From assembly GCA_024137785.1 (NCBI GenBank), contig JAHRHZ010000002.1:10024358-10088357 (forward strand): a DNA stretch of 64,000 nt, given 5' to 3'. The stretch comes from Ginglymostoma cirratum (taxonomy: Eukaryota). A program made the position numbers and the translations under genes. The notes under the pieces were generated by a model. The model was not told where the DNA came from. It saw nothing but the letters and a program-made list of their open reading frames with translations, and searched no databases. Every line of letters begins with the position of its first letter. Position 1 is the first letter of the stretch. Shown here piece after piece: positions 9,706 through 50,115 of the stretch.

Positions 9706-10601
9706 TCACTTACAAATGAAAGTAAAGGGATATTTGAGGGCACACAGCAGTTCCTGCCTGAACTTACTCTGGGTCACTGCATAAATGGCCGTGTTAATGC
9801 AGCAGCTCAGAAGCTGAAGCATAATTCCTGTCTTTTCATAAGTTTCATAAGGGCTAAATAGAGATGAGAGGATGAAGATGCTTGTAATTCGATAGTATAG
9901 GAAATATGTGACCGTTGTTATCCAGAGCAAGATAAAGCTGCCTGATATTGCAAAGAGCAAAACAATGGACTTTCTGCGATTTTTCATCTCAGGGTCCTCA
10001 TCATTTTCACCATTACGGTTGTGGACTCGGAGGTTCCTTCGTGCCTGGCTGGCCACTAAAATATATCTTACAGTGAGGATGTTCAAACATAAAATCAAGA
10101 CGAATGGAAGAATGGGAGTTAACAGCTGTTCAATCCAAGAAAATGCCATTGCTTCAGATTGAAAATAAATCACTGGTGATACAAAGCAACCCCTTGGTAT
10201 GTTGTTCACTATAACATAAGGAATGTACAAGAAGGCCCAAGGAATGTTTTTCAAAGAGAAAACCAAGGTCAGTATAATGGTCACTGCAGCAGCAGTTTTT
10301 ACTGAGCAATATTTAGATTTCAGCTTCTGGCAGCAAATGGCTACAAAACGATCAAAGGTAAAAGCAACCGTGAACCAGACAGAAATGTCGATGGCAGTCG
10401 GAGAGAGGAACAGAATAAACCTACAGACTGGAGTGTACAGCAGCAGAGAATTCCACCAATAAATTGCAGCAATCTGATGTAATGTCACATTAAAGACAAT
10501 CACCATGAAATCTGCTGTCGCCATGGCCACCAGGTAGTGAGTGATGCACTTGGAGAGACCACATTTCCCTCGACACAGGATTACAATTGCCACCAAATTA
10601 A
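9706..10601 (-). CDS. GPR139-like: GPR139/GPR142-like class A GPCR, gene A, exon 2 (model 12486-12555 + 9706-10601, 321 aa)
   Basis: Hydrophobic TM segments with YLVAMATAD (TM2), FTFDRFVAIC (TM3), FILLW (TM6), CCINTAIY..QSKFR (TM7/H8). Acceptor TTTCTCATAG, phase 1, stop TGA at 9706-9708. Confidence 0.92.
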
Positions 10602-20689: not shown

Positions 20690-21500
20690 AGAATCATACA
20701 GGACAGAAGTAACCGTTTGGAGCATGAAGTCTATATATATAAATATACACTAATGCCTACATTCGCCCATTTTCCCGCACTAGGCCCGAAGCCTTGAATG
20801 TTAGGACACTTCATTTGCTGATCCGAGTACTTTTTAAAGGTTACAGGATCCCCGTCTCAACTACCCTCCCAGGCAGTGCATTCAAGACAGCACGTACCTC
20901 CCCCTCATCCCACATCACACTCTGGGTGAAAAGACTTTTCCTCAAATCCACCCCCTCCCCAACCCTCAGTCCTTTCATTTTAAAAGTGTACCTTCTTGTG
21001 ATTGAACCTTCAACTATAGGGTACAGCTGTCTTCTATTCACCCTGACCATACCCCTCACAATCTAATACACTTCCACCAGGCCGCACCATCATCCCTAAC
21101 ACCCCCCCCCCCCCCCGCTAACTGTCTCTGCTCTGAAGAAAATAATCTGAATTTACCGAGTCTCTCTGCAGAACTGAAGTGCTTCAACCAACAGAGCATC
21201 TTGGTCAATCCACTCTGCACCTCCTTCCAGTGCCATCACCTCTCTCCTGCAGTGCGCTGACTAGATCTGCACGCACTACTCCAGCTGTGGTCAAACCAAA
21301 GTTCTGTACAGTTCCAACATGACCTCGCTGATGTTATAGTCTGCGCCTTAACTGGTAAAGGCAAGTGCCCTGTGTGTCTTCTGAACTCCCCAATGTCCCT
21401 CTCCTTCCACCTTCACGGAAATTTAGACAAGATCCCCAAGATCACTCTGTCTTTTTAGCTTCTTAGAGACTTACTATTGATTGCATACTCCCATCACTTG
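20690..21500 (-). mobile_element. Old CR1 3' fragment
   Basis: Minus ORF remnant MRGMVRVNRRQLYP..EGSITRRYTFK..SLFTQSV, a CR1 ORF2 C-terminus. Confidence 0.7.
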
Positions 21501-21592
21501 TTCCATGACCTTTGTGCGTGTTTGTGTGCGACACAAGTTGTGCACTATTTGCGTGTGAGAGAAGAAAAAATTACCTAAACCGCTTCTGATGT

Positions 21593-21636
21593 TTCCTTCC
21601 TGTCTGTTTCCACTCCCCCATATCCGGAAACCGAAC
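21593..21636 (+). promoter_or_regulatory. ETS and ETS-IRF-like sites in TATA-less proximal promoter of the NKp30-like gene
   Basis: TTCCTTCCTG and CCGGAAACCGAAC about 85-125 nt upstream of the ATG; motif match only. Confidence 0.3.
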
Positions 21637-21718
21637 TCAAGTTCATTGGTCCGTTGAATGACACAAATATTCTAATCCTTACGCTACCTTCATTATCAAT
21701 CAACCAGCTGTAGGGACA

Positions 21719-21761
21719 ATGCACTGGATTTCAGTTACCTGGATCACCGCTGTAATCTCAG
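21719..21761 (+). CDS. NCR3-like: NKp30/NCR3-like receptor, exon 1 (leader MHWISVTWITAVIS)
   Basis: ACAATG start, hydrophobic leader, strong donor CAG/GTAAGC, phase 1 in frame with the V exon. Confidence 0.75.
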
Positions 21762-22099
21762 GTAAGCAGGTTTAGGCATGAGTTAACATCAGGCTTGCAC
21801 TGGCATGCATGATGTATTCTCAAATTGTTGCCTTTTCGGGTTAGGGCATCTTAACATCTCAGCACAGTGGCAATGCTGTCTGAGCAACACAGACCCATCT
21901 CCAAATGGAAGCTCACTGAGACAGTTGCCATACAGAGGTTGATGCTTCACAGTTCCTTATGGTGAATTTATGTTTACCCGGGGAAGGAAAGTACAGTGTC
22001 GACATTGGAAATGGTAGGAGTGACAACAAGATAAATCAAAAAGCATTGGGTAGGATGAGGAGAGATTTTAGGATAGTACCTACAAACGTATTCAGAATA

Positions 22100-22490
22100 C
22101 GACTGAGAAAAAGATATAGATACGTAGATAGATAGATAGACAGACAGACACATGCAAGACGTATGGACAAATGCACAAACAGACAAATGAACACATTAAT
22201 AGCCCGATCGATAGAAAGGTAGACAAACGGGCAGATAGACAGACACATGGAGGGAGAGACAGACAGCTAGTTGGATGTTTACATCAATAGGTACACATAA
22301 ACAGAAAGATTGTTAAATAGGTAGTTCAATAGACAGATTTATACTCACAGATAGAAAAAAAAGATCGACAGCAGACACATGGAACGATAGTCAAACAGCC
22401 AGATAAGTAAAAGAAAGAAAAATATAGGTAGATAGTTGGGTGGATGGATAGATAGGTAGATAGATAGAACGAGATAAATAGATCGAAATA
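22100..22490. repeat. Degenerate (GATA/GACA)n tract in intron 1
   Basis: Read directly. Confidence 0.8.
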
Positions 22491-23565
22491 TGAGTCGGAT
22501 CGAAATGAGTCAGAAAGACAAAGAAGAAATGGATACTAATTAGGGGCAAATCAATAGAAATAGATCCTCTCTCACATAGCGTTTTGTTGCGTTACGGGAT
22601 GCATTTTGATTTCAGGGCATTTTGCCATTTGTCTCTGCCTCATGACGCGGTGGATACACGTTTAAAAACAGCATTCAAAATGAAATCGGCAAAATCATTA
22701 AAAGATATACAGGTACTTTGATATAACGAAAGAAAGCAGCGTGTGAGCTAATTATTCTCTGATAGAGACAGTGCAGTCTCCCTGGAATGAACAGCCTCTA
22801 TGTCTGCCGTAGAATTCCAGAATTCTTTCCATGCAACATTTTACAAATATTCCTTATCCCTGAGAATGACTTGCAGGGCTGGCTGGATCGAACCAAACAA
22901 TTGTTTTCGAATCTTTTTGTCTAACCCCCGAATAATTGTAGCAATTTAAGGGAATACAGAGAAACATACATAATTGGAGCAGGAGTAGGCTTGCTCCACC
23001 ACTCATTGTGATAATGGCAGATTATCCAACTCAGTAGCCTGCTCCCGCTATATCCCTGTGGTTTCACTTCTCTTAGACCCAAGAGTGTATCCAACTCCTT
23101 CTTGAAAACAGCCAATGTTTGGGCCTCGACTGCTTTCTGTGGCAGAGAATTCCACAGTTTCCCCACTCTCTTGGTGAAAACATTTCTCCTCATCTCAATC
23201 GTAAATGGATTATCCCATATTCTTGCATTTAGACCCTGGGATCTGGCCTCGAGAGCAATCGGGAATATCCTCCCTGCATTTACTGTACCTGTCTAGTCTC
23301 TTTTCTATGAGATCGCTCCACCACCTCTTAGTTCTAAGCTCCAGTGGATATGACCCTAATACAACCTTTTTCTAGTTCTTAATTTGAGGTAATATCTGTG
23401 CAGCTGTCTCCTACGTATGAAACATTTCTTTGATCAGCAGTTTAAGGAATTTGATAAACAGCGCTTAAAGAGGTAATGATAGGCATTTTAGATTTTTACA
23501 CTATAGCTGTGTAAGAACAGATAGACCACAGCGTTTGTGCAGGAACACAGGAATAGGAGTAGGCC

Positions 23566-23663
23566 ACAAAAACAAAGTTGCTGGAAAAGCTCAGCAGGTT
23601 TGGCAGCATCTGTGGAGGAGAAAACAGAGTTAACGTTTCGGGTCCGGTGACCCTTCCTTAGAA
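23566..23663 (-). mobile_element. Penelope-like terminal repeat fragment
   Basis: AAAAACAAAGTTGCTGGAAAAGCTCAGCAGG family, also found at the end of the Penelope element at 54670-54810. Confidence 0.75.
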
Positions 23664-23806
23664 CACCGGACCATAACGTAGAGCAAATGATAGGTCTTGA
23701 ATGTGCCATGATAAACATAATTTGGATTAAAACTGGAATTAAATGACATGCTTTAAGAAAAAAAGATTGGATGCAGTTTTATGACGTTTGTCTTACCCAT
23801 TTACAG

Positions 23807-24148
23807 CAGGTGCTGTTGGAAATATCACAGTTATTCAGAGCCCGAACTCTCTCACCAAAACGCCGGGCCAGACAGCGCGCCTGGGCTGTACGTATCAGGG
23901 ACCCAGTGGTATCGGCAGCTACGCGTGGCACCGGGGGAGCAAGCGGGGAAATGAAGTCTCCAACAACACAGAGGAGTTCGGAGGCCGCGTATTCGCGGCA
24001 AGCCAAGAGGATTTCAGGGACAGGAGAGATGCCTCGATCAGAATCGTTAATCTGAAACCAGAGGACACCGGGTTCTATACCTGCGAAGTGGTTTTCCTGG
24101 GGATGCGGGAAGCCTATGGAACAGGGACCACACTGATAGTGACACGGG
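23807..24148 (+). CDS. NCR3-like: NKp30/NCR3-like receptor, exon 2 (germline-joined VJ Ig domain)
   Basis: V-set Cys/Trp/Cys, DTGFYTC, J-like YGTGTTLIV. IGSYAWHR..GNEVSNNTEEFGGRV..CEVVFLG resembles human NKp30 IGSVTWFR..GKEVRNGTPEFRGRL..CRVEVLG (from memory). Phase 1/1; donor G/GTAAGT. Confidence 0.92.
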
Positions 24149-25225
24149 GTAAGTGCGGGGCAGCTGAGTTATTCCTAGCGAAACAATATGGACTTAATCA
24201 TGGACGATCATTCCAGTAATGTGTTTCTTTTCGGCTTTAGGCAAACTATACACTATTAACCCAAACTGTGATCTCTACCGTAACATCAACGTCAGGTACC
24301 CCTCCAATTACTATATTATCCAGGCTTGGAATGATTATTAGCTCGCAGTACCTGCCTCAAAATCCTGTTACGCCCTCCCTAACAAGCACTGTAAGTGTGT
24401 AAGAACAGACAGACCACAGTGTTTATACAGGAACACAGGAACAAGGAGTCGGCTATTCCAACTGTTCGAACCTGTCCCACTGTTTAATGACATTATAGCT
24501 GATCTGTAAACTAACTTCGTGTATTTGCCTTTGGTATTTAATCTTTGCTTAACAAAAAAAAAACTCCCTCAGATTAAAATTAACAACAGATTTAGCATCC
24601 ACTGCAGTTTTGTGTGGAGAGCTCCAAATATCTACCACCCTTTGTATGTAGAGGCGCTTCCTAATACCTCTCTTGAAAGGTCTGGCCCTAATTCTCAGAC
24701 TATGCCCCTTAGTTCCAGAAACCTCATTCAGTGTAAATAGTTTTAATCAAGTGGCTTATCATCTTCAGAAAGAAGCCGCTTTTAAGATTCACAATGAATA
24801 TTAAACATCTTAGCGGTGGTTGAATTTCCCAGTAGAAATGATTGGTATTATTAAAATTGGATTGCATACAGTTTGGGCAATCCCTTAACAAGTAATCGGT
24901 CATTGGGTGCCAGTGGGGAATTGGAATGCTAATGAGGACAACAGTTGGGACTTGCTATTTCAGCTGGTGAAATGACACCCGGTAACCAATGGCCCGAAAC
25001 TGGTAGCAGCGTCTTAACGTTCCTGAATTCACATCCTGATCGTGCCGCTTAAAGACTAGGATTCTCTCCAGTTGTCCGTTGCGTTCTCAATCGATGACTA
25101 AGTTTGATCAAGGCCAATGAAAAATATTCGTCAAGAGCTGCACACCATACAGAATTGAAACCTTGCGTGCTATTCACTGATCATCATTCTACCCTTGGCT
25201 GTTCTTTCTGTAGACTTTCTCACAG

Positions 25226-25354
25226 ATAATGACGGGAGCAGCACAGCTGAGTCCAAGTCAAATACCTCTCCATTTGTCTTTGCAATGGCGGCGGAGTTGT
25301 CTCTCCTGTTCATCATGGTGGTTATAATCATTGTCATGCGCTGCCAAAAGACCG
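25226..25354 (+). CDS. NCR3-like: NKp30-like receptor, stalk and transmembrane exon
   Basis: Acceptor TTTCTCACAG; DNDGSSTAESKSNTSP-FVFAMAAELSLLFIMVVIIIVM-RCQKT; donor G/GTAACA; 129 nt, phase 1/1. Confidence 0.85.
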
Positions 25355-25389
25355 GTAACAATCCGAATTCGTGTGCCTGTGAGTATCAT

Positions 25390-25985
25390 AGTCATATCAT
25401 CATACAGCACAGAAACAGGCCCTTAATTCCACTCGTCTATGTCGACCAGCTTTTCCACACTAAACTAATCTTATTTGCGTGCTTTTGGCCCATATCCCTT
25501 GAAGCGTTTGCTATTCATATCCCTGTCCAAATGTCTTTCCAGTGTTGTAACTGCAGCACTTCTGCTGGCAGTTCACTCCATATGCGCATCACCCTCTTTG
25601 TTTAAAACGATGCCCCTGCGGTCCCGCTTAACGGTTTCTCCTCTCATTTTAAACCTATGCCCTCTGGTTTTGAACGCCCCTACTATAGGGAAAGTACCTT
25701 TTTAGTATCCTTGCCCCAGCAGACGAGAACTGTATGCAATTCTCTAAAGGTGTCCTGTACAGTCACAACATGACATCCCAACTCCCATACTCAATGCACT
25801 GACCGATGAAGTCAAGCATGCCAAATGCCTTCATTACCTCCCTGTCTACCTGCGATCCCACTTTCAAGGAAGTATCTGCTTGAATCACTCGGGGTCTCTG
25901 TTCCACAACACTCCCCAAGGCCCTACCATTAACTACGTATGTCCTGCCCTGGCGTGTCTTAACAGGATGCAACATCTCACTGTCG
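25390..25985 (-). mobile_element. CR1 3' fragment in intron
   Basis: Minus ORF remnant NGRALGSVVEQR..KAFGMLDFIGQCIEY and CR1 tail. Confidence 0.75.
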
Positions 25986-26267
25986 ATGTATGAACGATGC
26001 TAACTTTGCAAGTTTTAACCTGTAAGTCGGCCAGGTTGAGTTGGAACGCTGGCTATAAACTCCCCGAGTCCGCTCACCAATTTGCTTTGAATTGAGAGTA
26101 GTATTGTGGTTCTTGGTGAGTGAAAACAGCGCAGCCTCCCTCACATTGGGCTGTTTCTCAAGGAGGGATTTCAGTCAACTTGGACGATACATTATTTCAT
26201 TAAGGAGTAAACTTAATTATGGGCTCAGAAATTTAATAATTCTGTTACTACTTTCCTTTCTCCACAG

Positions 26268-26289
26268 CCACTCCCGAGCAACCCGAAAG
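26268..26289 (+). CDS. NCR3-like: NKp30-like receptor, cytoplasmic micro-exon (ATPEQPE)
   Basis: Strong pyrimidine tract CTTTCCTTTCTCCACAG; donor AAG/GTAACT; 22 nt, phase 1/2. Confidence 0.7.
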
Positions 26290-26400
26290 GTAACTGGCTG
26301 CATAGAATCTGTTATTTGATATCCGATCTGGTATTTCCCTTGTTGTCTGTGTTTTCTTCAACATCTAACTTCCCTGCTGTCCATTTTATTTTTGCTACAG

Positions 26401-26435
26401 GCCAGTTCCCCTGTACGCAGAGATCCATAAGGGAG
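26401..26435 (+). CDS. NCR3-like: NKp30-like receptor, cytoplasmic exon (RPVPLYAEIHKG)
   Basis: Acceptor TTTTTGCTACAG; donor GAG/GTGAGT; 35 nt, phase 2/1; carries a YAEI tyrosine motif. Confidence 0.78.
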
Positions 26436-26927
26436 GTGAGTAACACAGAGAAATATGCATAATATCTTTTTTTTAAAAAAACGAACTACTACTGGGTTCA
26501 ATGGAATGAATTTGACTTCTCCTTGATGGGGTGGTTAATTGTATTTTTTGACAGTTATAATCTGAAAATCTGTCAGAAACTAGGGCATAAAGATTAACGA
26601 TGATTTAGAGAAAGCCAAGGGGTCATATAGATTTTCTCTCTTAACTCAGCGAATCACTGTTATCTGGAATACATTGACTGATGGGAAGACAGATGAAATA
26701 CGATAAGAGAAATTTTCGTGGAGAAATGGATATTTCAAAGGAGGCGAGTTGCAGGATTCATTGGAAAAAAAGTAGCAAATTGGACCTGATTGGCAACATT
26801 TATATATATATATGCTGTTATCAATGTTGCATCCTATAATATTAAGGTGCCGGTACTGTATTTTAATGTATAACCCTAAGAGAAGTGTACTGAATTAGAC
26901 GATATTAATTGCTTCTCTGTTGCCTAG

Positions 26928-26968
26928 AGACCAGCTGTGTCCGCTCTGAAAGCAGAAGAACCAACCAG
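26928..26968 (+). CDS. NCR3-like: NKp30-like receptor, cytoplasmic exon (ETSCVRSESRRTNQ)
   Basis: Acceptor CTTCTCTGTTGCCTAG; donor CAG/GTACGT; 41 nt, phase 1/0. Confidence 0.7.
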
Positions 26969-28428
26969 GTACGTAACTCGCATTACAATATCAGTGAACT
27001 TGGTAACCTGGTTGTTAATATTTCCAGCTAGATTGTAACCATCGTCATTGTGCAGATCGAGATGAAGAAGCGAGGACTCTCGTAGCACAATCATAGAATA
27101 CCTCTGGTTTAACAGGTCTGGGATCTAGTCCCACCTGCTCCAGAGGTGTGTTGTAGCCTCTCTGAACAGATTGGTTCAAACACATCTGGATAAATACGCA
27201 AAGTTCGGGGTACTGATTGGTGCTTTTGATGATGTGTGTGAGATTTTCGGCTTGCCCCGCTGGCTTGCATTGTGTCCCTTTCCAGAGGCAAGTTTTAGGC
27301 ACAGCTACGGTAAATTGGAAACAAATAGAAATATCGGAATTCAACAGAGAGCAGTCAAGGAAATGTGTGAAATGAAAACGGAATGGTCCAGAAATTAAAA
27401 AAAAATACTAAGGCCATTCTGGTTTGAGATGAGGAAAGACCGCTTCACGAAGAGTGTTGCGTATCAATAGTCTTCTCTTGTCCCGATTGTTGGGTCAATG
27501 AGTTCATCAGAGACTGAAATCGGTAGATTATTCAGTTGTTGACGAACCAAAGGGCATGGTTGGTGGGAAAAGGAATTGATGTCGTTGGCCTAGACGTTTA
27601 TACCAATGTGTACAGACGTGCTATTACAGATATCTGGGATGCGATGGGACTTGAACTGAGGTTGTCTGCCCCAGAGGTTGGGACACTGCCAATGTCTCAT
27701 AGGCCCTCCCATCATCAATTGCTTCATCAATGACCTTGAGATTGCATCGAATGCTCTCAGAATTTAAAGGGTCACTGGACCCGAAACGTTAACTTTAATT
27801 TATCTTCATAGATCTGCTGCCAGATCTGCTGAGTATTTTCTCTCTATTTCTGTTTCTGTCTCTCAGTATTTGTTCGGTTGTCCATCTTCCCTGTTTTGTT
27901 CTCGCTGTTGTTTCTATTAAGGTTTAGATCAAACTCGTCTTTGCTGTCACATTTCAGCGTCTCTTCTGTTGAATTTTAATGGTTTCTTTCTAACTCACAC
28001 GTCTATTATCTGTTCAGCGATCAATCACTTTTTTTCATATCCGATGAAGCACATGCGAACGCTCTTGTTTATTTCGGCGTGTATAGCAAGTTTTGTCTCT
28101 TGTTCGTCTTCTAATTCCAGAATGTATTTCTCCAATCTCTGCATCAAGTGTTTCGTTATTTTTTTCCGCTGTGGTTTCCAAGATCAGTTTTAAAGAGATG
28201 ACACTTTGAGCCCCAGTCCTGAATGCCTGCACTCCATTGATCTTGGTTTCAATGGCCTTTTAACTAGTAATTGACCTCTTGAGTCACTTCGAATGTATTT
28301 GCAGGATGGAGGTTGTTGATGTATTTGAACAGCGTGTCTCAGGTTGTGTTTTAGACACTATACTGTTTCTGACTCGCGGCTCTACACTCGATTTGCGCCA
28401 GTTCACGCCAACGCTTTAACCTCAATAG

Positions 28429-28635
28429 GACGATGACGGGATTCAATACACCGCGATCAATGCGCAGGAGGAAAGTCGATGTGTGCTCCCGGTGAATGAG
28501 CAGACAGTGACCTATGCTGCAGTGAAGAAAACGAGGCAGAAGCGATTCAGCGATGTGAAGCACCGCGAGAGGGTGATAGAGGAAGCTATCCCCCCACCTC
28601 TCCCACCCACCACCACCCAGGGATCTCGCCTTTAA
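28429..28635 (+). CDS. NCR3-like: NKp30-like receptor, terminal exon with two ITIMs
   Basis: Acceptor CTTTAACCTCAATAG, phase 0: DDDG-IQYTAI-NAQEESRCVLPVNEQT-VTYAAV-KKTRQKRFSDVKHRERVIEEAIPPPLPPTTTQGSRL-stop. Total model is 819 nt, 272 aa. Confidence 0.82.
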   Translation, partial: DDDGIQYTAINAQEESRCVLPVNEQTVTYAAVKKTRQKRFSDVKHRERVIEEAIPPPLPPTTTQGSRL

Positions 28636-28864
28636 TTTCTCGGGAGACTCTGTAAGGCAGCCGAAGTTGGAGTGCTGGTGCTGAAGGGAATTGTTCACCA
28701 GTCGTCCAGCTTCTGAGTGAGTTGCATCCGTTTACACACATGTTGCAAGGAATTGCAAACTGAAATGTCTTTAACATTTAGGCTGCTCGGTATGAGTTGT
28801 AAAATCTTGCTGCCTTTGATCGATATGTTTTCACCCTCTCTTTTGAACGGTATCGTGCCACTGA

Positions 28865-28870
28865 AATAAA
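28865..28870 (+). terminator. Candidate polyadenylation signal of the NKp30-like gene
   Basis: AATAAA 230 nt after the stop; a second one at 28998-29003. Confidence 0.4.
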
Positions 28871-30513
28871 CAGGTTGAAGCAAATACTAAAAACACAGTC
28901 AACATCTTGTATGTTCGCCCTCGTCGGTATCCAAATGCACCCAGTTTCAGTCCATAACTCCACTGGCCTGCTCATGCTCCTTTTTATCTAATTTGAAAAT
29001 AAAACAGGGAGAACTGAAGGACGGTCTACCAAATGCCTGTCTGAAGGAGACATTCTGGCATCTGTGTGGCAACACCTCTGTGTAAGAGAAACTGCACAGA
29101 ACAACCTCTCTCTTAAAGGCACAGTACCGTCACACATTGTCAACCTTTCCTTTCCTCTTTACTATCGTTCAGTTTTGAATACGTGTCTCTCTTTGGCTCC
29201 TAAAGAGTGACAGAGAGATATTCAACTTGAGATCACAATGCCAGTATTCCTAATGACTGAGATGCTGACGTTTTAAGGATTTCGAAGCTATTATTCCCGA
29301 CACCACTGAGTCCAATCCTTCCCTTGAGACACTGACATTACAGCCATCAGCATGACAGGCCCCTGTGAGGCATGTTCTAACCAATCTGCACAAAAGATGT
29401 TAGTGCATGCCCGTAGAGCAAGTGGGGGTTGAACACTGATCTTTTAGCTCAGAGGCAGTGACAATAACACTGTGCCACAACGACGCTGACCTCCTTGTGA
29501 AGTTACTGAAGTTGTAGGACTGGATGGTGATGTTATTCATCATTGTGGCGTCGGCGATGACGTAGGGCGCCAGGAACACCCACAGCCAGGTGACGGAGAG
29601 AGTTGTCATCAATGAGGTAGAGAAGTTCTAACATCACCGGGATAAGGAGGGGACCAGTGGTAGTCGACGCAGGTCGATTGGGCGGAATGGCTTACGCCTG
29701 TTCTTGTATATCTTGCATTCAACTGTTGTCTGGTTCAAGACAGGTTTCCTGCCCTTCAAGACAGGAAACCTGCAGTCCTTGTCAGGCCTGCCTAATGTGA
29801 CTCAAGCCCCACAATAAGGTAGGTGTTTCTGAAAGGCCCTCTGAAAATGTCCGGACTAAACAATCAGAAAAGGGCAACAAATACTGGCATTTGAACCTAT
29901 GCAAGAATGCCATGAATGCGTGAACTAAAAGATATGCGCTCCCATCCCAAGGAGTCTTCACCCCAAAATATGTCACCTTACCTGATGCATTTGAGTACGG
30001 GCAGGTAAATGGAGTTAGGCTCCATGATCTCATCAGGTAAGATCTCATTGAATGGCAGAACCAGCTGAAGGGGCTGGATGGCCACCTTCTATTCATATGT
30101 TGCAAATGCTTGCTGTGTGCAAATTTCCGCTGGACCTAAAATAGCTACACTTGGGGGAAAAAATTCATAGGAGCAATGTGATTTGGGAGGGTCTCATTCA
30201 CCAGACAAAACAGAGAATTTTGGAAAAACTGAGCAGGCCAGGCAGCATCTATGGAGACAGAGAGACAGAGTAAAAGTTTCGAATCCAGTGACCGTTCTTC
30301 AGAATTGGTAACAACAGCTGTCTCAACTTTAATACTGAGTTCCGTGACTGAAGAATCAAGGACTAAAAGCCAAATGTTTTAGTCAAAGGTTTTTTTTTGA
30401 TCCTCAAAACTTGAAACATATAAAAGAATCAATGTTGTCCTGAATTATCACTGAAAGAAAAACATTCTAATTGAATTTACTGTGACTTTGCTCTTCCTTC
30501 CAACAGCGTTTGC

Positions 30514-31039
30514 CAACCAAAAGATCTGCGGATGCTGTAAATCGGCAACAAAAACAAAGTTGCTGGAAAAGCTCAGCAGGTCTGGCAGCATCTNNNNNNN
30601 NNNNNNNNNNNNNNNNNNNNNNNNNNNNNNNNNNNNNNNNNNNNNNNNNNNNNNNNNNNNNNNNNNNNNNNNNNNNNNNNNNNNNNNNNNNNNNNNNNNN
30701 NNNNNNNNNNNNNNNNNNNNNNNNNNNNNNNNNNNNNNNNNNNNNNNNNNNNNNNNNNNNNNNNNNNNNNNNNNNNNNNNNNNNNNNNNNNNNNNNNNNN
30801 NNNNNNNNNNNNNNNNNNNNNNNNNNNNNNNNNNNNNNNNNNNNNNNNNNNNNNNNNNNNNNNNNNNNNNNNNNNNNNNNNNNNNNNNNNNNNNNNNNNN
30901 NNNNNNNNNNNNNNNNNNNNNNNNNNNNNNNNNNNNNNNNNNNNNNNNNNNNNNNNNNNNNNNNNNNNNNNNNNNNNNNNNNNNNNNNNNNNNATGCTGC
31001 CAGACCTGCTGAGCTTTTCCAGCAACTTTGTTTTTGTTC
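30514..31039. mobile_element. Young Penelope-type inverted-repeat insertion spanning an assembly gap
   Basis: Near-perfect inverted arms on both sides of the N run; TSD CAGCGTTTGC at 30504-30513 and 31040-31049. Confidence 0.75.
30594..30993. other. Assembly gap (400 N)
   Basis: N run. Confidence 1.
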
Positions 31040-34857: not shown

Positions 34858-35774
34858 TTAGTTGTTCACATTTGCTTTATTAGTCAATTGAATAATGAAT
34901 GAAAATGGATAATGCACTGCATTTTTCAACTGCTGTCTGAATCTGGACTGAGTCACCCCATAAATAAATGCATTTGTACAACAATTTATTTCCGCCAGCA
35001 TAACTCCTACATGTTGGAAAATGTATAAAGATTCATTGTAGTTCTGTGGATTAACTCCAGCAATGTTATAATATAAGAAGTTTAGAACATATAAAAACCA
35101 CAGGAGTATGAAACTGCCAGATATGGTGAAGAGTAAAATCATAGACTTTCTCCTGCTTTCCATTTCTGGGTCAGGGTGATCTTCTGTCTTTTTCTGATTC
35201 ATCAGTCTCTTACGGACTTGACTTGTCCCTAATATATATCTGACTGTGAAAGCATTTAATAATAAAATTAAAACAAATGGGGTCGATGGGGTTAAAACCC
35301 TATCAAACCAACTAAATGCTACCCAACCAGGATCACTATAATAGCTTGGCTTTGCATTACAAAACCAGGGAACATTTTCAATTTCTTTTACAGATTTGTA
35401 TACAAAGTAAAAAGGCAAGTTTTTAAAACAGAACAAAATCCATGTTGTTCCTAGAACTACAATCACAGTTTTCTTGGTGCAGTATTTTATTTTTAGCTTT
35501 TGATGACAAATGGCCACAAAACGGTCAAAGGAGAATGCGATGGTGAAACAGACAGAACAGTCTCTATATATATGAAACAGGACAATGAGGCCACGACATA
35601 CAGGTGTAATGCTCAAAAATGATCCTGGAAAGTAATACAAGCTGATCCGTAAGAGTATGAACTCAAGGATAATGAACTGTAGATCTGCTGTTGCCATGCT
35701 CACAAGGTAGCAAGTGGTACAGGTGGAAAGGCCACATTTTCCGCGGGATAAGATCAAAATTGCCACTAAATTAG
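34858..35774 (-). CDS. GPR139-like: GPR139/GPR142-like GPCR, gene B, exon 2 (model 37522-37585 + 34858-35774, 326 aa)
   Basis: YLVSMATAD, FSFDRFVAIC, FILLW, NCCTNAFIY..QSRFR; acceptor TTTCTCTTGTTTACAG, phase 1. Confidence 0.92.
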
Positions 35775-37521
35775 CTGTAAACAAGAGAAAAGAAAGGTGA
35801 TTACTGATCAGATATTCTCTTTGTTGGAGTCCAGTGATCAACGACAGGATGTCTAGCACTACATGTGGGTTGGGCTTTAGGTAATGCTTTCAAAATTCTC
35901 AAACCTGATTCCAGTGAGTTTTTATCCGGGGTCACTTGAGTTGGTACATGGGATGGACAAACATCAATGCCTCGGAAGCACATTGTTAATTTATATATTT
36001 TATTGAAGCTATGTTCCTCATGAAGAATAGCAAAACAGTCATGGTTTAAATTGAGTGCATCTGCAGAAATCGGTGATACAGAGGGAGATATTTGCCTTGG
36101 TAGAGGAATTTCAAAGTGGTGTATGTAGGTTCATCAAGTGATTCAGCAGGAAAATGAAACTTTGGAGATAATTGCGGAGGAATCGAGTGTAAAAAAGGGA
36201 AATTTCATCAAACCGGGGGTTCTGTGTATAGTTTTGGACTCCTTTTCTAAAGAATGTAATTATATTACAAGCAGTTCAATAAAAGATTGACTTGACTGAT
36301 TCCAGGTTGAGCAGGTTGGCCAATGTCAGCTGGAGTTTAGTAGAAGAAATGATGAACCTATTAAAACATACATTCACTCCAATGTTCCAAACACAGTGAC
36401 TGGTCTTGGAGTGCCGATTAGGGCCTTGACCTCTGATTCTGGAAGTCGCTGCCATGTCAGACCTCAAAGCCCTGCACACATCTGCGAAGGAAATTAGAAG
36501 GAATGCTGATTGAGGAGATATTTCATCTTCTGGTCGAACATGGAACAAAGGGACGCAATTTCACAAAAAGGGGTCTTTGATGTAAATCTGAGATAGGGAG
36601 ATTTCTTTTAGTGTGTGGAATTTTCTTTTCTTCAGGGAACAGCCAAGGCTGGATTATTCAGTACATTCAAGGCTGATTTTGAGAAGTTTTTATTGAAAAT
36701 GGATTCTAGCTGGCACGGATAGCAATGAAAGCAGAGTTGAGACACATCATGCGTGCATGCTTCTATCAAATGATAGTTTGGTTCAGTAATGTGAACTCTC
36801 TACCTCTTCTTGATTTAGGACGTAATCTGGTTTGTAGCTTAAATTCTGGATGGCAAGCTTTTACCTATTTTATTCCACACCGGCTTGTTTCACTCCACTT
36901 CATGATCTACTTGCAAGACAATTTGACATTGACTGGGTATAATCACCATTTTCCGAATGGACCAGAGGAATGTCATCCCATTAGAGAGAGACAACCGGTA
37001 GCTATTTAATATGAGTGACCCCATACCTCAGGCAAAGGGAGAGGTTGAGAAGGATGGTCACCTCAGCAGGTGCAGGAATTGAACCCACACTGTGGGTGTT
37101 AATCTGCATTGCAAACCAGCCATCCAAGCTAACCAACCTTCTGCATTGACTCATGCTCCCAGTGATAATGTGCTCACTGTGTCAGAGGTCCTACTTTGAT
37201 GAATGATCCCCATGAGGGATAATACTGCAGTGACAGACACTCCCACTAATGCCTCCCCTCAGCAGTTCTAATATACCTAGTATTCAACCATGCATAATAA
37301 TTCGGTGAGCCTTTGCAGAACAAATAGGTTTATTCTCACTTTAGGGATGGAATAAAATCAAAAGGCTAATTCAGGAAATATGAGTTTTAAAAAAGATATC
37401 ATTGATCAGGGTCTGCAGAAAATCACTGTTCAATCAGAATGCAACATTATGAGTCATTGATTGAAAACAGAGAGCAGCTCTGCCATGCATTTACATACTG
37501 TCAATGCTCTTCGTCACTTAC

Positions 37522-38420: not shown

Positions 38421-38929
38421 CACAGCTGCTCAGAATAAGGAACAGGTCACTCAGAACTGATACAAGGATGAATTTCCTCACGTAGATAGTGGTGACTCTT
38501 TGGATCTCTCCCCCTGAGGGGTCAGAGGGCCGTGGGAGCTCTACTGTTGAATAAGTTGACAAACACAGATGTTGATAATTTACTTCATATTAAAGTAATA
38601 AGGGGCTCAGGGATAATGCAAGGAGACACTGTTGTCGTAGAGTGTCAGACAAGATCTCTGTGAACGGCAGATCAAGCTCAAAGAGATGAAGGAAAATCCT
38701 TACGTATCATGGCTGGTGCAAGATGACAGCACATTCTCTTGGTTTTGGAAAACTCCTTGTCACAATGGGCCAAATAGTCTCCTTCCATGCTGTTGGTATC
38801 TATATGTCTGCGTTAGTCTGTATAAGGCAGACGACATGATGAGTGACACATTGAGAGAGCCATGGGGGATGTTGAAATTTCTACTTTCAAACTTTGAACA
38901 CAGAGCTATCTCAATGCAATCCCAAAATC

Positions 38930-39420
38930 TGATTCAAATCCCATTCCTCGATTCAAAGACGGTTTTGAAAAGCCGGGGACAAGCAACTTCTATTACTAAA
39001 TTGGACTTACTCACAGGATACTGGCAAGTACCTTTATCTAAAAGAGCGAAGACAATTTTGGCCTTTGTGACACCGAATGGAATGTACCAATTTAAAGTCA
39101 TCCCATTTGGTGTGAAAAACGCACCAGCCACATTTGAAATACTAACTAACAGAGTCATTTTAGGATTATCCAGTTCTGTGGTGTGTATTGATGATCTGGT
39201 GATTTTTAGTCACACATGGAAGGAACATTTCCAACACTTACTGGAATTGTTCGAAATGACTTTGGGAGTTGCACTAAAGTTGCTTAAGAGTGAGCTTGCA
39301 AAAGAACAAGTCATCAGTCCTGGGCCATGTCTTTGGACGTGGACAGATGGCCTCATGGGACATGAAAACATATTTCATTGAGAATTTCCAACACCATCAA
39401 TGAAGAATGCACCTTAAAAG
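38930..39420 (+). mobile_element. Gypsy LTR-retrotransposon reverse transcriptase fragment
   Basis: ITKLDLLTGYWQVPL..AFVTPNGMYQFKVIPFGVKNAPATF..CIDDLVIFS (degenerate YxDD). Confidence 0.88.
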
Positions 39421-47731: not shown

Positions 47732-48645
47732 TTATTGTAGCACATTTCCCCATTGAGCACACTTACAAATGAGAGTGAAGGGATATTTGAGGGCACGCAG
47801 CAGCTCCTGTCTGAACTTACTCTGGGTCACTGCATAAGTGGCTGTGTTAGTGCAGCAGCTCAGAAGCTGAAGCATAATTCCTATATTTTCGTAAATTTCA
47901 TAAGGGCTAAGTAGAGATGTGAGAAGAAAAAAATATGTAATTCTATAATACAGGAAATAAGTGACAGTTGTGATCCAGAGCAGGATAAAGCTGCTGGATA
48001 TTGCAAACAGTAAAATGATGGACCTTTTACGATTCTTCATCTCAGGGTCTTTGTCATTGCTCCTGTGGACACGAAGGTTCATCCGGGCCTGACTGGCCAC
48101 TAAAATATATCTGACAGTGAGGATGTTCAAAAACAAAATCAAGAAGAATGGAAGAATGGGAGTTAACAGCTGTTCAATCCAAGAAAATGCCATTGCTGCA
48201 GGTTGAAAATGAACCACTGGTGATACAAAGCAACCCCGTGGTATGGTGTTCACTCGCTCATAGGGAATGTATAAGAAGGCCCAGGGAATGTTCTTTAAAC
48301 AGAAGAACAAGCTCATTGTAATTGTCACCACAAAGGCAGTTTTCACTGTGCAATATTTTGATATTGTCTTGTGACAGCAAATGGCTACAAAACGATCAAA
48401 GGTAAAGGCGACTGTGAACCAAACAGAAATGTCGATGGCAGTCGAAGACAGGAACAAAATTACTCCACAAACAGAAGTGTACAGCAGCAGGGAGTCCCAC
48501 CAATAAATCATAGCAATCCGATGTAACGTCACGTTAAAGACAGCCACCATGAAATCTGCTATTGCCATGGCCACCAGGTAGTGAGTGATACATTTGGAGA
48601 GATCGCATTTCCCCTGACTCAGGACCACAATCGCAACCAGGTTCA
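47732..48645 (-). CDS. GPR139-like: GPR139/GPR142-like GPCR, gene C, exon 2 (model 51291-51360 + 47732-48645, 327 aa)
   Basis: Close paralog of gene A; FTFDRFVAIC, FILLW, CCTNTATY; acceptor TTTGTCACAG, phase 1. Confidence 0.92.
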
Positions 48646-50115
48646 CTGTGACAAATAGAAAAGAAAACAGTTACGTAAGAGGCTGGAGTGACCGATAATG
48701 AGTAAAATGCCATGGCATTGTCATTTTATTTTCTCTGTGTTCTGATCTTCTCTGCTGCAGGTGCTAGTCATCTTGGTAGAATGAATTTGTCATGACTTAC
48801 TGGGGTAGTGCTAAAACCACTTCCTGAAGTCTTTATAAATTTTATAAGGTCCACAAAGATTCCTCAATTTATGCAATCTCTGGACCTAGGTTGACAGAAA
48901 GCGCAGACAATTTTTAACAATAATTATTATACAGTCGAAATAAATAGAACCTAGCTCATAGGAAATAGTTGTAAACCATTGGCAGATAATACTACTCACT
49001 AAAACTCTAACTTCATCATAATTTCCCTTACAGACATGCACACACACACACACATGTGCACACAACCCCCTCCCCTCCCAATGCACATGCAGACTCCGAC
49101 AAAAAAGGATTCAAGATGGAGGGAGAACCAGGAAAGCAACTCAAAGGTTTCTGTTCACGAGGGTTTGTGGAATGATCCTGATCATTCTGATGCTTGTCAG
49201 AATTCTGCATCTTAATCATTCTTTTCTATTGCTTTCACTGTTCTGAAAAAGGCACGATGTAGCTGGTCTATTTCCAAAATTGTCGCCAAATTATCAATTG
49301 AAATTTAGACCAACTTCTGAATGAAAAATAAACTGCTTTTTATCAAGTTTACAGTGGCTAACTTCACAGAATGGAGAGAGAGAGAGAGAGAGAAAGAGAG
49401 TGTGCTCCTGGCTGGTGAAGAGCAAAAGGCTTCACTGGATCTTATTCCCATCTCTAAACTGTTCAGTAACCTGAGAAAATAATCACAGGCCTGTTTTCAG
49501 ACAGAAGACATTTGTCGTTGTGCATCTGTCAGTAATCCGCAATCTAATCTGCTATTTTACCAATCAAAGCTCCATTCATATGCAACCCTTTGGCTCCAGT
49601 TCACCTGCAAACACTGCTGCAACTGGCAGCTACACAAATAGTACACACAATGAATATCAAATTATTCACTTTCCATACACGTGGAAATTCATGGTTATTA
49701 GAGCCCTAAGACAAAGTAAGAGTATCTATTTGGTCAATCTAGTCAGCTTGGCATTCAATCAGGACACAGCTGATCTGATCACCTTCAATTTCGTGTTCCA
49801 GTTTGTTCCTCATGGGCCTTGATGTCCGCAGTCTTTTCAAATTGAAGAATCACATTGGGCATCTGGACCAATTTTGTTTTTGAGCCTTTAGGTTATCTTT
49901 CTCTAACCAACAACAATCCGGTAGCAGAGGTAAAATTGAACAGCACTGAGCATAAATCTGACCAGGAGAGAGACAACACTCGCAGAAGGAGTTAGTAAAG
50001 CTCTATTATTAGGCTTATGAGTGCGTGGTTAAAAGCAGAAGAAAATTTTAAAAATTGGTATAATAAGTAAAATAAGAATGAAAGCAACAACCAAATTAAA
50101 AGGAGTAAGAGAGGA

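What the first reader, a model, noticed from the sequence alone, without database searches (positions are those of the whole stretch)
21719..28635. Predicted inhibitory NKp30-like receptor: germline VJ domain with a tandem-ITIM tail
Seen: seven exons with GT-AG ends and consistent intron phases (1,1,1,2,1,0) join into an open 272-aa frame. The leader and four cytoplasmic exons are absent from the ORF track. The last exon has two exact (I/V)xYxx(I/V) ITIMs, IQYTAI at 28441-28458 and VTYAAV at 28507-28524, with Tyr residues 22 aa apart. A membrane-proximal YAEI and a C-terminal PPPLPP are also present. Known: mammalian NKp30 is activating, short-tailed and signals via CD3-zeta/FcR-gamma; tandem ITIMs recruit SHP-1/SHP-2. 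Inference: this is the inhibitory member of a paired NKp30-family system in cartilaginous fish, possibly binding B7H6-like ligands. I recall ITIM-bearing NKp30 relatives (XMIV) in Xenopus, so novelty must be checked.
Basis: partly seen in the sequence, partly recalled or inferred. Interest (0 to 1): 0.88.

Follow-up and report, generated by a model that had tools for sequence, protein, structure and literature searches.

The report
Nurse shark NKp30-family inhibitory receptor gene
This is a real, expressed nurse shark gene of the already published NKp30 (NCR3) immune-receptor family, and its tail carries two conserved inhibitory (ITIM) motifs; it is an undeposited copy of a known kind, not a new kind of receptor.

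Summary
The seven-exon model is real. All splice sites and phases (1,1,1,2,1,0) hold, and both ITIMs sit at the stated coordinates with tyrosines 22 residues apart.

Spliced contigs of one public run show five of the six junctions. There are two corrections:
- The transcripts use a donor at 25378, not 25354, which gives 284 aa.

The exon 1-2 junction was not covered by reads.

The V exon is 88% identical to a deposited nurse shark NCR3 (QTT61898.1, Kinlein et al. 2021). It groups with that protein and its shark orthologues, and NKp30 is the closest solved structure.

Models in Chiloscyllium, Heterodontus and Scyliorhinus have the same exon plan and the same two tyrosine motifs 22 residues apart. 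Sterlet, lungfish, newt and gecko NCR3-like proteins keep a 21-23 residue spacing. Inhibitory signalling is therefore the best reading, but it is inferred and not shown.

The transmembrane Glu is real in RNA but is not conserved in the orthologues.

The scan has already reported several similar NKp30-like ITIM genes on the same chromosome.

Verdict: new member of a known kind, modest interest.

The parts
21719..21761 (+). Exon 1: start codon and leader (MHWISVTWITAVIS), phase-1 donor
   Evidence: Sequence and donor CAG|gtaagc. Matches the N-termini of QTT61898.1 and XP_043533718 by tblastn. The junction to exon 2 was not covered by reads.
23807..24148 (+). Exon 2: whole VJ-type Ig V domain, including the J-like YGTGTTLIVT
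   Evidence: Pfam V-set 2.3e-14. Best solved relative is NKp30. 88% identical to nurse shark NCR3 QTT61898.1. AlphaFold pLDDT 89, V fold. Joint 24148|25214 seen in X1.
24241..24295 (+). Dead relic of a stalk exon inside intron 2 (55 nt, AG/GT flanked, frameshifted)
   Evidence: It starts as GKL in phase 1, then matches the QTT61898.1 stalk (ILVTQTAISTGMTSTS) in another frame. Including it gives stop codons in exon 3. Transcripts skip it.
25214..25378 (+). Exon 3: stalk, transmembrane helix (VFAMAAELSLLFIMVVIIIVM) and start of the tail.
   Evidence: Contig 25213-25378 with 0 mismatches and joint 25378|26268. Hydropathy maximum 2.76 over residues 21-41 of the exon. Translation.
25294..25296 (+). 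GAG codon: Glu inside the transmembrane helix
   Evidence: Sequence. Covered by the mismatch-free RNA contig. Absent from QTT61898.1, XP_043533718, chiPu_0017018 and XP_067865395.
26268..26289 (+). Exon 4 (22 nt, TPEQPE), phase 1 to 2
   Evidence: joint 26289|26401. Homologous TPEQ/TLQQPE in QTT61898.1 and XP_043533718.
26401..26435 (+). Exon 5 (35 nt, PVPLYAEIHKG). Read-through of its donor would give GE-stop.
   Evidence: The Tyr is not conserved: Asn in Heterodontus, Cys in Scyliorhinus.
26928..26968 (+). Exon 6 (41 nt, TSCVRSESRRTNQ), phase 1 to 0
   Evidence: joints 26435|26928 and 26968|28429.
28429..28635 (+). Exon 7 coding part: 68 aa with both ITIMs, a basic stretch, PPPLPP and stop TAA
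   Evidence: tblastn to XP_043533718 residues 204-250 and XP_067865395 residues 236-268. Tail alignment.
28441..28458 (+). ITIM 1, IQYTAI
   Evidence: Aligned with VQYAEI, VQYATL and MQYAQL in other sharks.
28507..28524 (+). ITIM 2, VTYAAV, with its Tyr 22 residues after the first
   Evidence: Aligned with MVYAKV and VLYATV in other sharks, with the same 22-residue spacing.
28865..28870 (+). AATAAA, likely polyadenylation signal about 230 nt after the stop
   Evidence: Pattern search. The transcript 3' end itself was not observed.

Best explanation
The stretch is an intact, transcribed nurse shark (Ginglymostoma cirratum) gene of the NCR3/NKp30 family. It is a close paralogue of the deposited NCR3 QTT61898.1.

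It encodes a type I membrane protein of 284 aa (276 aa with the alternative exon 3 donor). The parts are a leader, one non-rearranging VJ-type V domain, a short stalk, a transmembrane helix without Arg or Lys, and a roughly 110-aa tail built from small exons.

The last exon carries two canonical ITIMs, IQYTAI and VTYAAV, with their tyrosines 22 residues apart.

The likely mechanism is this:
1. Ligand binding by the V domain clusters the receptor.
2. Src-family kinases phosphorylate both ITIM tyrosines.
3. The doubly phosphorylated tail binds the tandem SH2 domains of an SHP-1 or SHP-2 type phosphatase.
4. The phosphatase dampens nearby activating signals.

Shown here: the gene structure, its transcription and splicing, family membership, and conservation of the motifs. 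Inferred: phosphorylation, phosphatase recruitment, the inhibitory outcome and the ligand.
For: - Splice sites, phases and open exon-wise frames.
- Five GT..AG junctions and mismatch-free exon contigs in run X1.
- V-set domain. NKp30 is the best solved relative with the single sequence (47.4 bits, against 42.6 for SIRP-beta) and with a family profile (64.9 against 51.6 bits).
- 88% V identity to QTT61898.1, and a sister position in the tree (95/84), inside a starred clade of seven shark sequences (97/89).
- The same exon plan and the same two Tyr motifs 22 aa apart in C. plagiosum XP_043533718, C. punctatum chiPu_0017018, H. francisci XP_067865395 and S. canicula XP_038671257.
- Tandem ITIMs 21-23 aa apart in sterlet, lungfish, newt and gecko NCR3-like proteins.
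- Two ITIMs arise in only 0.4% of shuffles of the tail.
- From established knowledge of PECAM-1, SIRP-alpha, PD-1 and LAIR-1: tandem ITIMs about 20-30 residues apart are the usual docking site for SHP-1/2.
Against: - No biochemical evidence exists. ITIM-like motifs do not always recruit phosphatases; the NKp44-1 ITIM failed to do so (PMC6514059).
- In Chiloscyllium and Scyliorhinus one of the two motifs has Met at position -2, so it is not strictly canonical.
- The TM helix carries a Glu (25294-25296), which is unusual for a simple inhibitory receptor and hints at a membrane partner.
- A junction that skips the TM exon (24148|26268) suggests that part of the output may be a soluble form. That contig could come from the paralogue.
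- Run X1 is contigs of unknown library type and tissue, so expression level and cell type are unknown.
- The exon 1-2 junction was not observed.
Confidence: 0.7

Rival explanations
1. This is not a separate gene. It is a divergent allele or haplotype of the gene that gave the deposited NCR3 QTT61898.1.
For: It is sister to QTT61898.1 with 88% V-domain identity. Both forms occur in the same run, X1. NK-receptor genes can be very polymorphic.
Against: - Exon 3 is only 53% identical at the protein level.
- The 21-aa stalk exon of QTT61898.1 is frameshifted and skipped here.
- The V exons differ at 15 of 227 nucleotides.
I did not verify this, and which deposit it is, is not stated.
Confidence: 0.1
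2. The tail does not act as a plain phosphatase-recruiting inhibitor. The transmembrane Glu may tie the receptor to a partner chain with a basic TM residue. The tyrosine motifs may serve endocytosis (YxxPhi) or recruit other SH2 proteins (SHIP, Csk, SAP-type adaptors). The outcome would then be modulatory or context-dependent.
For: The Glu lies within the best hydrophobic window and is confirmed in RNA. Nurse shark has a short-tailed NCR3 with Lys in the TM (QTT61904.1). The proline-rich PPPLPP and the membrane-proximal YAEI add possible docking sites.
Against: The Glu, YAEI and PPPLPP are not conserved in the orthologues, whereas the two ITIM positions are. There is no ITAM: the Tyr-Tyr distances are 27 and 22 residues.
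Confidence: 0.15
3. The main product is a soluble, TM-less decoy made by skipping exon 3. It would be the V domain joined in frame to the tail exons, and the ITIMs would be irrelevant.
For: Joint 24148|26268 with GT..AG ends, at a contig depth similar to the 24148|25214 joint. The skip is in frame.
Against: - Only 24 letters lie on the short side of that joint, and the flanking exon 2 end is identical in the paralogue at the protein level. The contig may therefore not belong to this gene.
- Contig depth is not quantitative.
- The conserved ITIMs argue for a membrane-bound form.
- A mismatch-free exon 3 contig exists.
Confidence: 0.05

Closest known systems
Nurse shark NCR3 family (Kinlein et al., Immunogenetics 2021; 73:333; deposits QTT61898.1 and QTT61904.1)
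   Same: Same species and the same family. The V exon is 88% identical to QTT61898.1, with the same leader, VJ exon, TM exon and small tail exons 4-5.
   Different: - The window's protein is not in the protein collection.
- QTT61898.1 ends in GE-stop, exactly what read-through of the exon 5 donor gives here, so that deposit shows no ITIM.
- This gene has a dead stalk exon, a TM Glu and a divergent exon 3.
- I could not read the paper, so I do not know whether it describes ITIM tails.
RefSeq/GenBank models in other sharks: C. plagiosum LOC122541165 (XP_043533718), C. punctatum chiPu_0017018, H. francisci XP_067865395 (named SIRP-alpha-like), S. canicula LOC119975537
   Same: Same V subtype (starred clade), same exon plan, and the same two tyrosine motifs 22 residues apart.
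   Different: These are automatic models, unnamed or misnamed. None has a Glu in the TM. The second or first motif has Met at -2 in Chiloscyllium and Scyliorhinus. They have no PPPLPP end.
Mammalian NKp30 (NCR3; PDB 3NOI, 3PV6, 6YJP)
   Same: Single VJ-type V domain, and the best solved-structure match by sequence and by profile. About 33% identity and 2.8 A rmsd to the model.
   Different: Mammalian NKp30 has an Arg in the TM, signals through CD3-zeta/FcR-gamma and has a short tail without ITIMs (PMC6514059). This protein has Glu and no basic residue in the TM, and a long tandem-ITIM tail.
NCR3-like proteins of sterlet, lungfish, newt, gecko and frogs (automatic annotation)
   Same: NKp30-type V domain plus a tail with tandem ITIMs 21-23 residues apart in sterlet, lungfish, newt and gecko. 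Frogs have a mix of ITIM and basic-TM forms.
   Different: V domains are only about 35-45% identical. They sit in a separate bony-vertebrate clade in the tree.
SIRP-alpha and Xenopus XMIV
   Same: SIRP-alpha has a VJ-like first domain (second-best solved match) and an ITIM tail that binds SHP-1/2.
   Different: SIRP has a V-C1-C1 ectodomain and four tail tyrosines. Here there is one V domain and no C1 exon, and the profile prefers NKp30 by 13 bits. XMIV could not be tested: no paper or sequence was available.

Membership tests
NCR3 / NKp30 family | Single non-rearranging V domain encoded with its J-like G-strand (GxGTxLxV) in one exon | tested here: met
   Exon 2 (23807-24148) holds the whole V-set domain and ends in YGTGTTLIVT. 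There is no second Ig exon in the gene.
NCR3 / NKp30 family | V domain closer to NKp30 than to other VJ-type receptors | tested here: met
   PDB search, single sequence: NKp30 47.4 bits against SIRP-beta 42.6. Seven-sequence profile: 64.9 against 51.6 bits. The fold search does not discriminate among V domains.
NCR3 / NKp30 family | Groups with sequences curated as shark NCR3 | tested here: met
   Sister to QTT61898.1 (95/84). The family is separated from rat SIRP-alpha at 91/87. SIRP was the only outgroup, so the wider test is weak.
NCR3 / NKp30 family | Basic TM residue pairing with CD3-zeta/FcR-gamma (mammalian hallmark) | tested here: not met
   The TM is VFAMAAELSLLFIMVVIIIVM, with Glu and no Arg or Lys. 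This is a feature of the mammalian activating form, not of most non-mammalian members.
NCR3 / NKp30 family | Linkage to the MHC | tested here: inconclusive
   The 64 kb window holds only three orphan class-A GPCR ORFs and retroelement fragments beside this gene. The wider chromosome is not readable here.
NCR3 / NKp30 family | Binds B7H6 | not testable with these tools
   There is no ligand gene in the window. Scan notes place nurse shark B7H6 genes on other pieces.
ITIM-bearing inhibitory immunoreceptors | Cytoplasmic (S/I/V/L)xYxx(I/V/L), ideally two copies about 20-30 residues apart | tested here: met
   IQYTAI and VTYAAV, with tyrosines 22 apart. Two ITIMs arise in 0.4% of shuffles.
ITIM-bearing inhibitory immunoreceptors | Motifs conserved in orthologues | tested here: met
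   Both tyrosines and their 22-residue spacing are kept in four other shark species. Position -2 is Met in some.
ITIM-bearing inhibitory immunoreceptors | Tyrosine phosphorylation with SHP-1/SHP-2/SHIP recruitment and functional inhibition | not testable with these tools
   This needs biochemistry.
SIRP family | V-C1-C1 ectodomain | tested here: not met
   One V exon only. Between it and the TM exon lies just a dead 55-nt stalk exon.
Paired activating/inhibitory receptor set | An activating partner with a near-identical ectodomain, a basic TM residue and a short tail | tested here: not met
   The nearest relative, QTT61898.1, has an uncharged TM. The Lys-TM nurse shark NCR3 QTT61904.1 shares only about 38% V identity. 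The search covered protein databases and this window only, so it is not exhaustive.

The most novel reading that the evidence does not exclude
The Glu in the transmembrane helix is unique to this copy among its orthologues and is confirmed in RNA. It could let this ITIM-bearing receptor pair inside the membrane with a short-tailed NCR3 paralogue that carries a Lys in its TM (such as QTT61904.1). An inhibitory and an activating NKp30 chain would then form one hetero-complex, instead of signalling as separate paired receptors.
Probability: 0.05. Interest if true: 0.7.

Novelty: new member of a known kind. Interest (0 to 1): 0.3.

Why it matters
NKp30 is the one NK-cell receptor traceable from sharks to humans, and in mammals it is purely activating.

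This locus adds an undeposited, expressed member to the published nurse shark NCR3 family. It also shows that, for this subtype, the full-length product carries a tandem-ITIM tail that the nearest deposited protein (213 aa) lacks. That deposit probably lacks it because it reads through the exon 5 donor.

The two tyrosine motifs keep a 21-23 residue spacing in NCR3-like proteins from sharks, sturgeon, lungfish, newt and gecko. This fits the idea that the ancestral NKp30 was inhibitory, or existed in both forms, and that the mammalian activating form is derived. That is a useful point for comparative immunology. It rests on automatic annotations, it may already be discussed in papers I could not read, and it needs biochemical proof.

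Tried and rejected
**Papers not available.** Four papers are not held by the library: Flajnik et al. 2012 (PMC3709836), Ohta & Flajnik 2015 (PMC4594805), Kinlein et al. 2021 (PMC8273117) and the DOI of the 2012 paper. I therefore could not check whether shark ITIM tails are already described. A full-text search for XMIV found nothing relevant. Searches combining NKp30, ITIM, Xenopus or amphibian, and cartilaginous found no paper on ITIM-bearing NKp30 relatives.

**Uninformative searches.**
- The run search gave a single run of unknown library type. It proved to hold spliced contigs, but it allows no statement on tissue, strand or level.
- The Atlas search with the tail exon gave only weak unnamed hits.
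- The Foldseek PDB search ranks antibodies, TCRs and NKp30 together and does not discriminate.
- Pfam finds nothing in the TM or tail exons.

**Readings rejected.**
- SIRP membership: one V domain, no C1 exons, and the profile prefers NKp30.
- An ITAM: the tyrosine spacings are 27 and 22 residues.
- PD-1/CD28 likeness: not pursued, since nothing pointed to it.

**No other copy in the window.** There is no second NKp30-like exon set here (tblastn).

**Joined protein not used.** All searches used single exons by reference or database proteins. The one exception is, where exon-wise translations of the four tail exons were pooled, without the split codons, for a composition shuffle only.

Full report
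**Observation.** I read 21500-28900 and rebuilt the model exon by exon.

| Exon | Coordinates | Content |
|---|---|---|
| 1 | 21719-21761 | leader |
| 2 | 23807-24148 | V domain |
| 4 | 26268-26289 | tail |
| 5 | 26401-26435 | tail |
| 6 | 26928-26968 | tail |
| 7 | 28429-28635 | tail, both ITIMs, stop |

Every acceptor ends in AG and every donor starts with GT. The phases are 1,1,1,2,1,0, and each exon is open in its frame up to TAA at 28633-28635.

YAEI and PPPLPP are present.

**Transcripts.** Only one public run (X1, library type not recorded) holds the stretch. I laid its contigs on 22750-28749, within the 6 kb limit. They show GT..AG joints at 24148|25214, 26289|26401, 26435|26928 and 26968|28429. 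Intron contigs are there too, at lower depth, so the run behaves like RNA.

Exon 3 is represented by a mismatch-free contig, 25213-25378, and by a joint 25378|26268. This keeps phase 1, adds GNNPNSCA, turns the split codon into Ser and gives 284 aa. Orthologues and the deposited paralogue use the upstream donor (…KT|A|T…), so both may be used.

A further joint, 24148|26268, skips the TM exon in frame. Its short side is 24 letters, in a part of exon 2 where the paralogue encodes the same residues, so I treat it as tentative.

The exon 1-2 junction lay outside the laid stretch. It rests on the match of the QTT61898.1 and XP_043533718 N-termini to 21719-21760. An AATAAA lies at 28865.

**What it is.** Exon 2 is a V-set Ig domain (Pfam 2.3e-14). 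Among solved structures human NKp30 is the best match (1.8e-11), just ahead of SIRP-beta (5.5e-10). With a profile of seven shark sequences the gap widens to 64.9 against 51.6 bits. An AlphaFold model (pLDDT 89.4) is a normal V fold. Foldseek puts NKp30 among many antibody and TCR V domains, which does not discriminate.

An exhaustive HMMER search with the V exon gave these nearest relatives:

| Protein | Length | Identity | Source |
|---|---|---|---|
| P0002 | 213 aa | 89% | nurse shark NCR3 QTT61898.1 |
| P0005 | 249 aa | 77% | C. punctatum chiPu_0017018 |
| P0006 | 166 aa | 71% | C. punctatum chiPu_0017023 |
| P0008 | 268 aa | 66% | H. francisci XP_067865395, named SIRP-alpha-like |
| P0001 | 469 aa | 55% | S. 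canicula LOC119975537, a fused model |

P0151 (C. plagiosum LOC122541165, 257 aa) came from the follow-up search with P0002.

A second V-exon contig in X1 differs from the window at 15 of 227 bases. It translates to QTT61898.1 at all seven amino-acid changes produced by the 13 substitutions that were listed. The organism is therefore nurse shark, and both genes are expressed.

In an IQ-TREE of 42 V domains the window is sister to QTT61898.1 (95/84). It lies inside a starred clade of seven shark sequences (97/89). The whole NCR3-like assembly (shark subtypes, lungfish, amphibians, gecko, horse NCR3) is separated from rat SIRP-alpha at 91/87. SIRP was the only outgroup available, so this is a weak test of the outer boundary.

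The nurse shark NCR3 family, which I recall from the abstract as comprising eight divergent subtypes, was published by Kinlein et al. 2021. I could confirm the citation but not read the paper.

**Paralogue, not the deposited gene.** Three differences separate the window gene from QTT61898.1:
- Exon 3 is 53% identical.
- The window gene has a Glu in the TM.
- The 21-aa stalk exon survives here only as a 55-nt, AG/GT-flanked relic at 24241-24295. It changes frame midway, and including it would introduce stop codons. Transcripts skip it.

Neither protein search returned a protein identical to the window's product, so it appears undeposited.

QTT61898.1 ends …YADMHDRGE-stop. Reading through the exon 5 donor of the window gene gives …YAEIHKGGE-stop. 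The 213-aa deposit is therefore most simply an intron-5 read-through form, which would explain why it shows no ITIM.

**The tail.** The aligned tails of the four shark orthologue models share D(D/N)x(I/V/M)QY(A/T)x(I/L)N…N(E/K/Q)Q(T/A)(V/M)(T/V/L)YAxVK, with exactly 22 residues between the tyrosines. In Chiloscyllium the second motif, and in Scyliorhinus the first, has Met at position -2. In Heterodontus and in the window both motifs are canonical.

The membrane-proximal YAEI tyrosine is Asn or Cys elsewhere, and PPPLPP is nurse-shark specific. The two ITIMs are thus the conserved elements.

Tandem ITIMs 21-23 residues apart recur in NCR3-like proteins of sterlet, lungfish, newt and gecko. Frogs and nurse shark also have short-tailed members with Arg or Lys in the TM.

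A shuffle of the 98 tail residues gives two or more ITIMs in 0.4% of trials.

From what is established for PECAM-1, SIRP-alpha, PD-1 and LAIR-1, such a pair is the docking site for the tandem SH2 domains of SHP-1/SHP-2. This is the basis for the inhibitory reading, and it is inference. The review notes that the NKp44-1 ITIM does not recruit phosphatases.

**The TM Glu.** The best hydrophobic window is VFAMAAELSLLFIMVVIIIVM. The GAG codon at 25294-25296 is covered by the mismatch-free RNA contig. None of the close relatives has a charge there. It may be a neutral oddity or a partner-binding site, and I cannot tell which.

**Paired system and ligand.** No activating counterpart with a matching V domain was found. 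The Lys-TM nurse shark NCR3 QTT61904.1 is only about 38% identical in V. The window holds no other Ig gene. Its neighbours are three orphan class-A GPCR ORFs and retroelement pieces. MHC linkage and B7H6 binding are untested.

**Earlier notes of this scan.** I did not verify these. They report other NKp30-like genes, several with ITIMs, 0.65-0.81 Mb and 9.2 Mb further along the same sequence. They also report nurse shark B7H6 genes elsewhere. This gene is therefore one of a sizeable family that the scan has met repeatedly.

**Limits.**
- Contig depth is not expression level.
- Only one run was available.
- The key family papers could not be read.

**Verdict.** It is unproven for pairing and ligand, and the finding is less novel than hoped: a new member of a known kind.

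Noticed in passing
window 24241-24295: A dead stalk exon lies in intron 2. It is 55 nt long and AG/GT flanked. It is homologous to the 21-aa stalk segment of the deposited paralogue QTT61898.1, but it shifts frame midway, so including it would truncate the protein. Transcripts skip it.
   Followed up: yes
window 24148|26268 (joint in run X1): A spliced contig joins the V exon directly to tail exon 4, skipping the TM exon in frame. This could be a soluble isoform, or it could belong to the paralogue.
   Followed up: partly
window 26436-26444 and protein P0002: Read-through of the exon 5 donor gives G-E-stop, the same ending as the 213-aa deposited nurse shark NCR3 QTT61898.1. That deposit may be an intron-retaining form that hides an ITIM tail.
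   Followed up: partly
window 25294-25296: A Glu codon lies inside the transmembrane helix. It is confirmed by a mismatch-free RNA contig and is absent from all close relatives. The scan noted it separately (s1-879839).
   Followed up: partly
window 9706-10596 (-), 34858-35859 (-), 47732-48646 (-): Three single-exon rhodopsin-family GPCR ORFs (Pfam 7tm_1). The first and third are 81% identical. The middle one is distantly nearest to chemokine and somatostatin receptors. This is a local orphan GPCR cluster around the NCR3 gene.
   Followed up: partly
window 23562-23665, 27767-27807 (inverted), 30544-30593 and 30994-31037 (flanking the N gap): A dispersed short repeat, SINE-like, has copies in introns 1 and 6 and on both sides of the assembly gap. 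In run X1 it reaches an extreme summed contig depth (about 197,000), so it is very abundant in that data set.
   Followed up: partly
window 38686-39381 (+): An ORF with a reverse-transcriptase domain (RVT_1, 8e-18), a retroelement fragment.
   Followed up: no
proteins P0097, P0102, P0103, P0124 (sterlet, lungfish, gecko, newt NCR3-like): The tandem ITIMs keep a 21-23 residue Tyr-Tyr spacing from sharks to a reptile. This suggests that an ITIM tail is ancestral for NKp30 and was lost in mammals.
   Followed up: partly
protein P0008 (H. francisci XP_067865395): The Heterodontus orthologue of this NCR3 subtype is named 'tyrosine-protein phosphatase non-receptor type substrate 1-like' (SIRP-alpha-like) by automatic annotation, while a sister isoform is named NCR3-like. 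This looks like a naming inconsistency.
   Followed up: no
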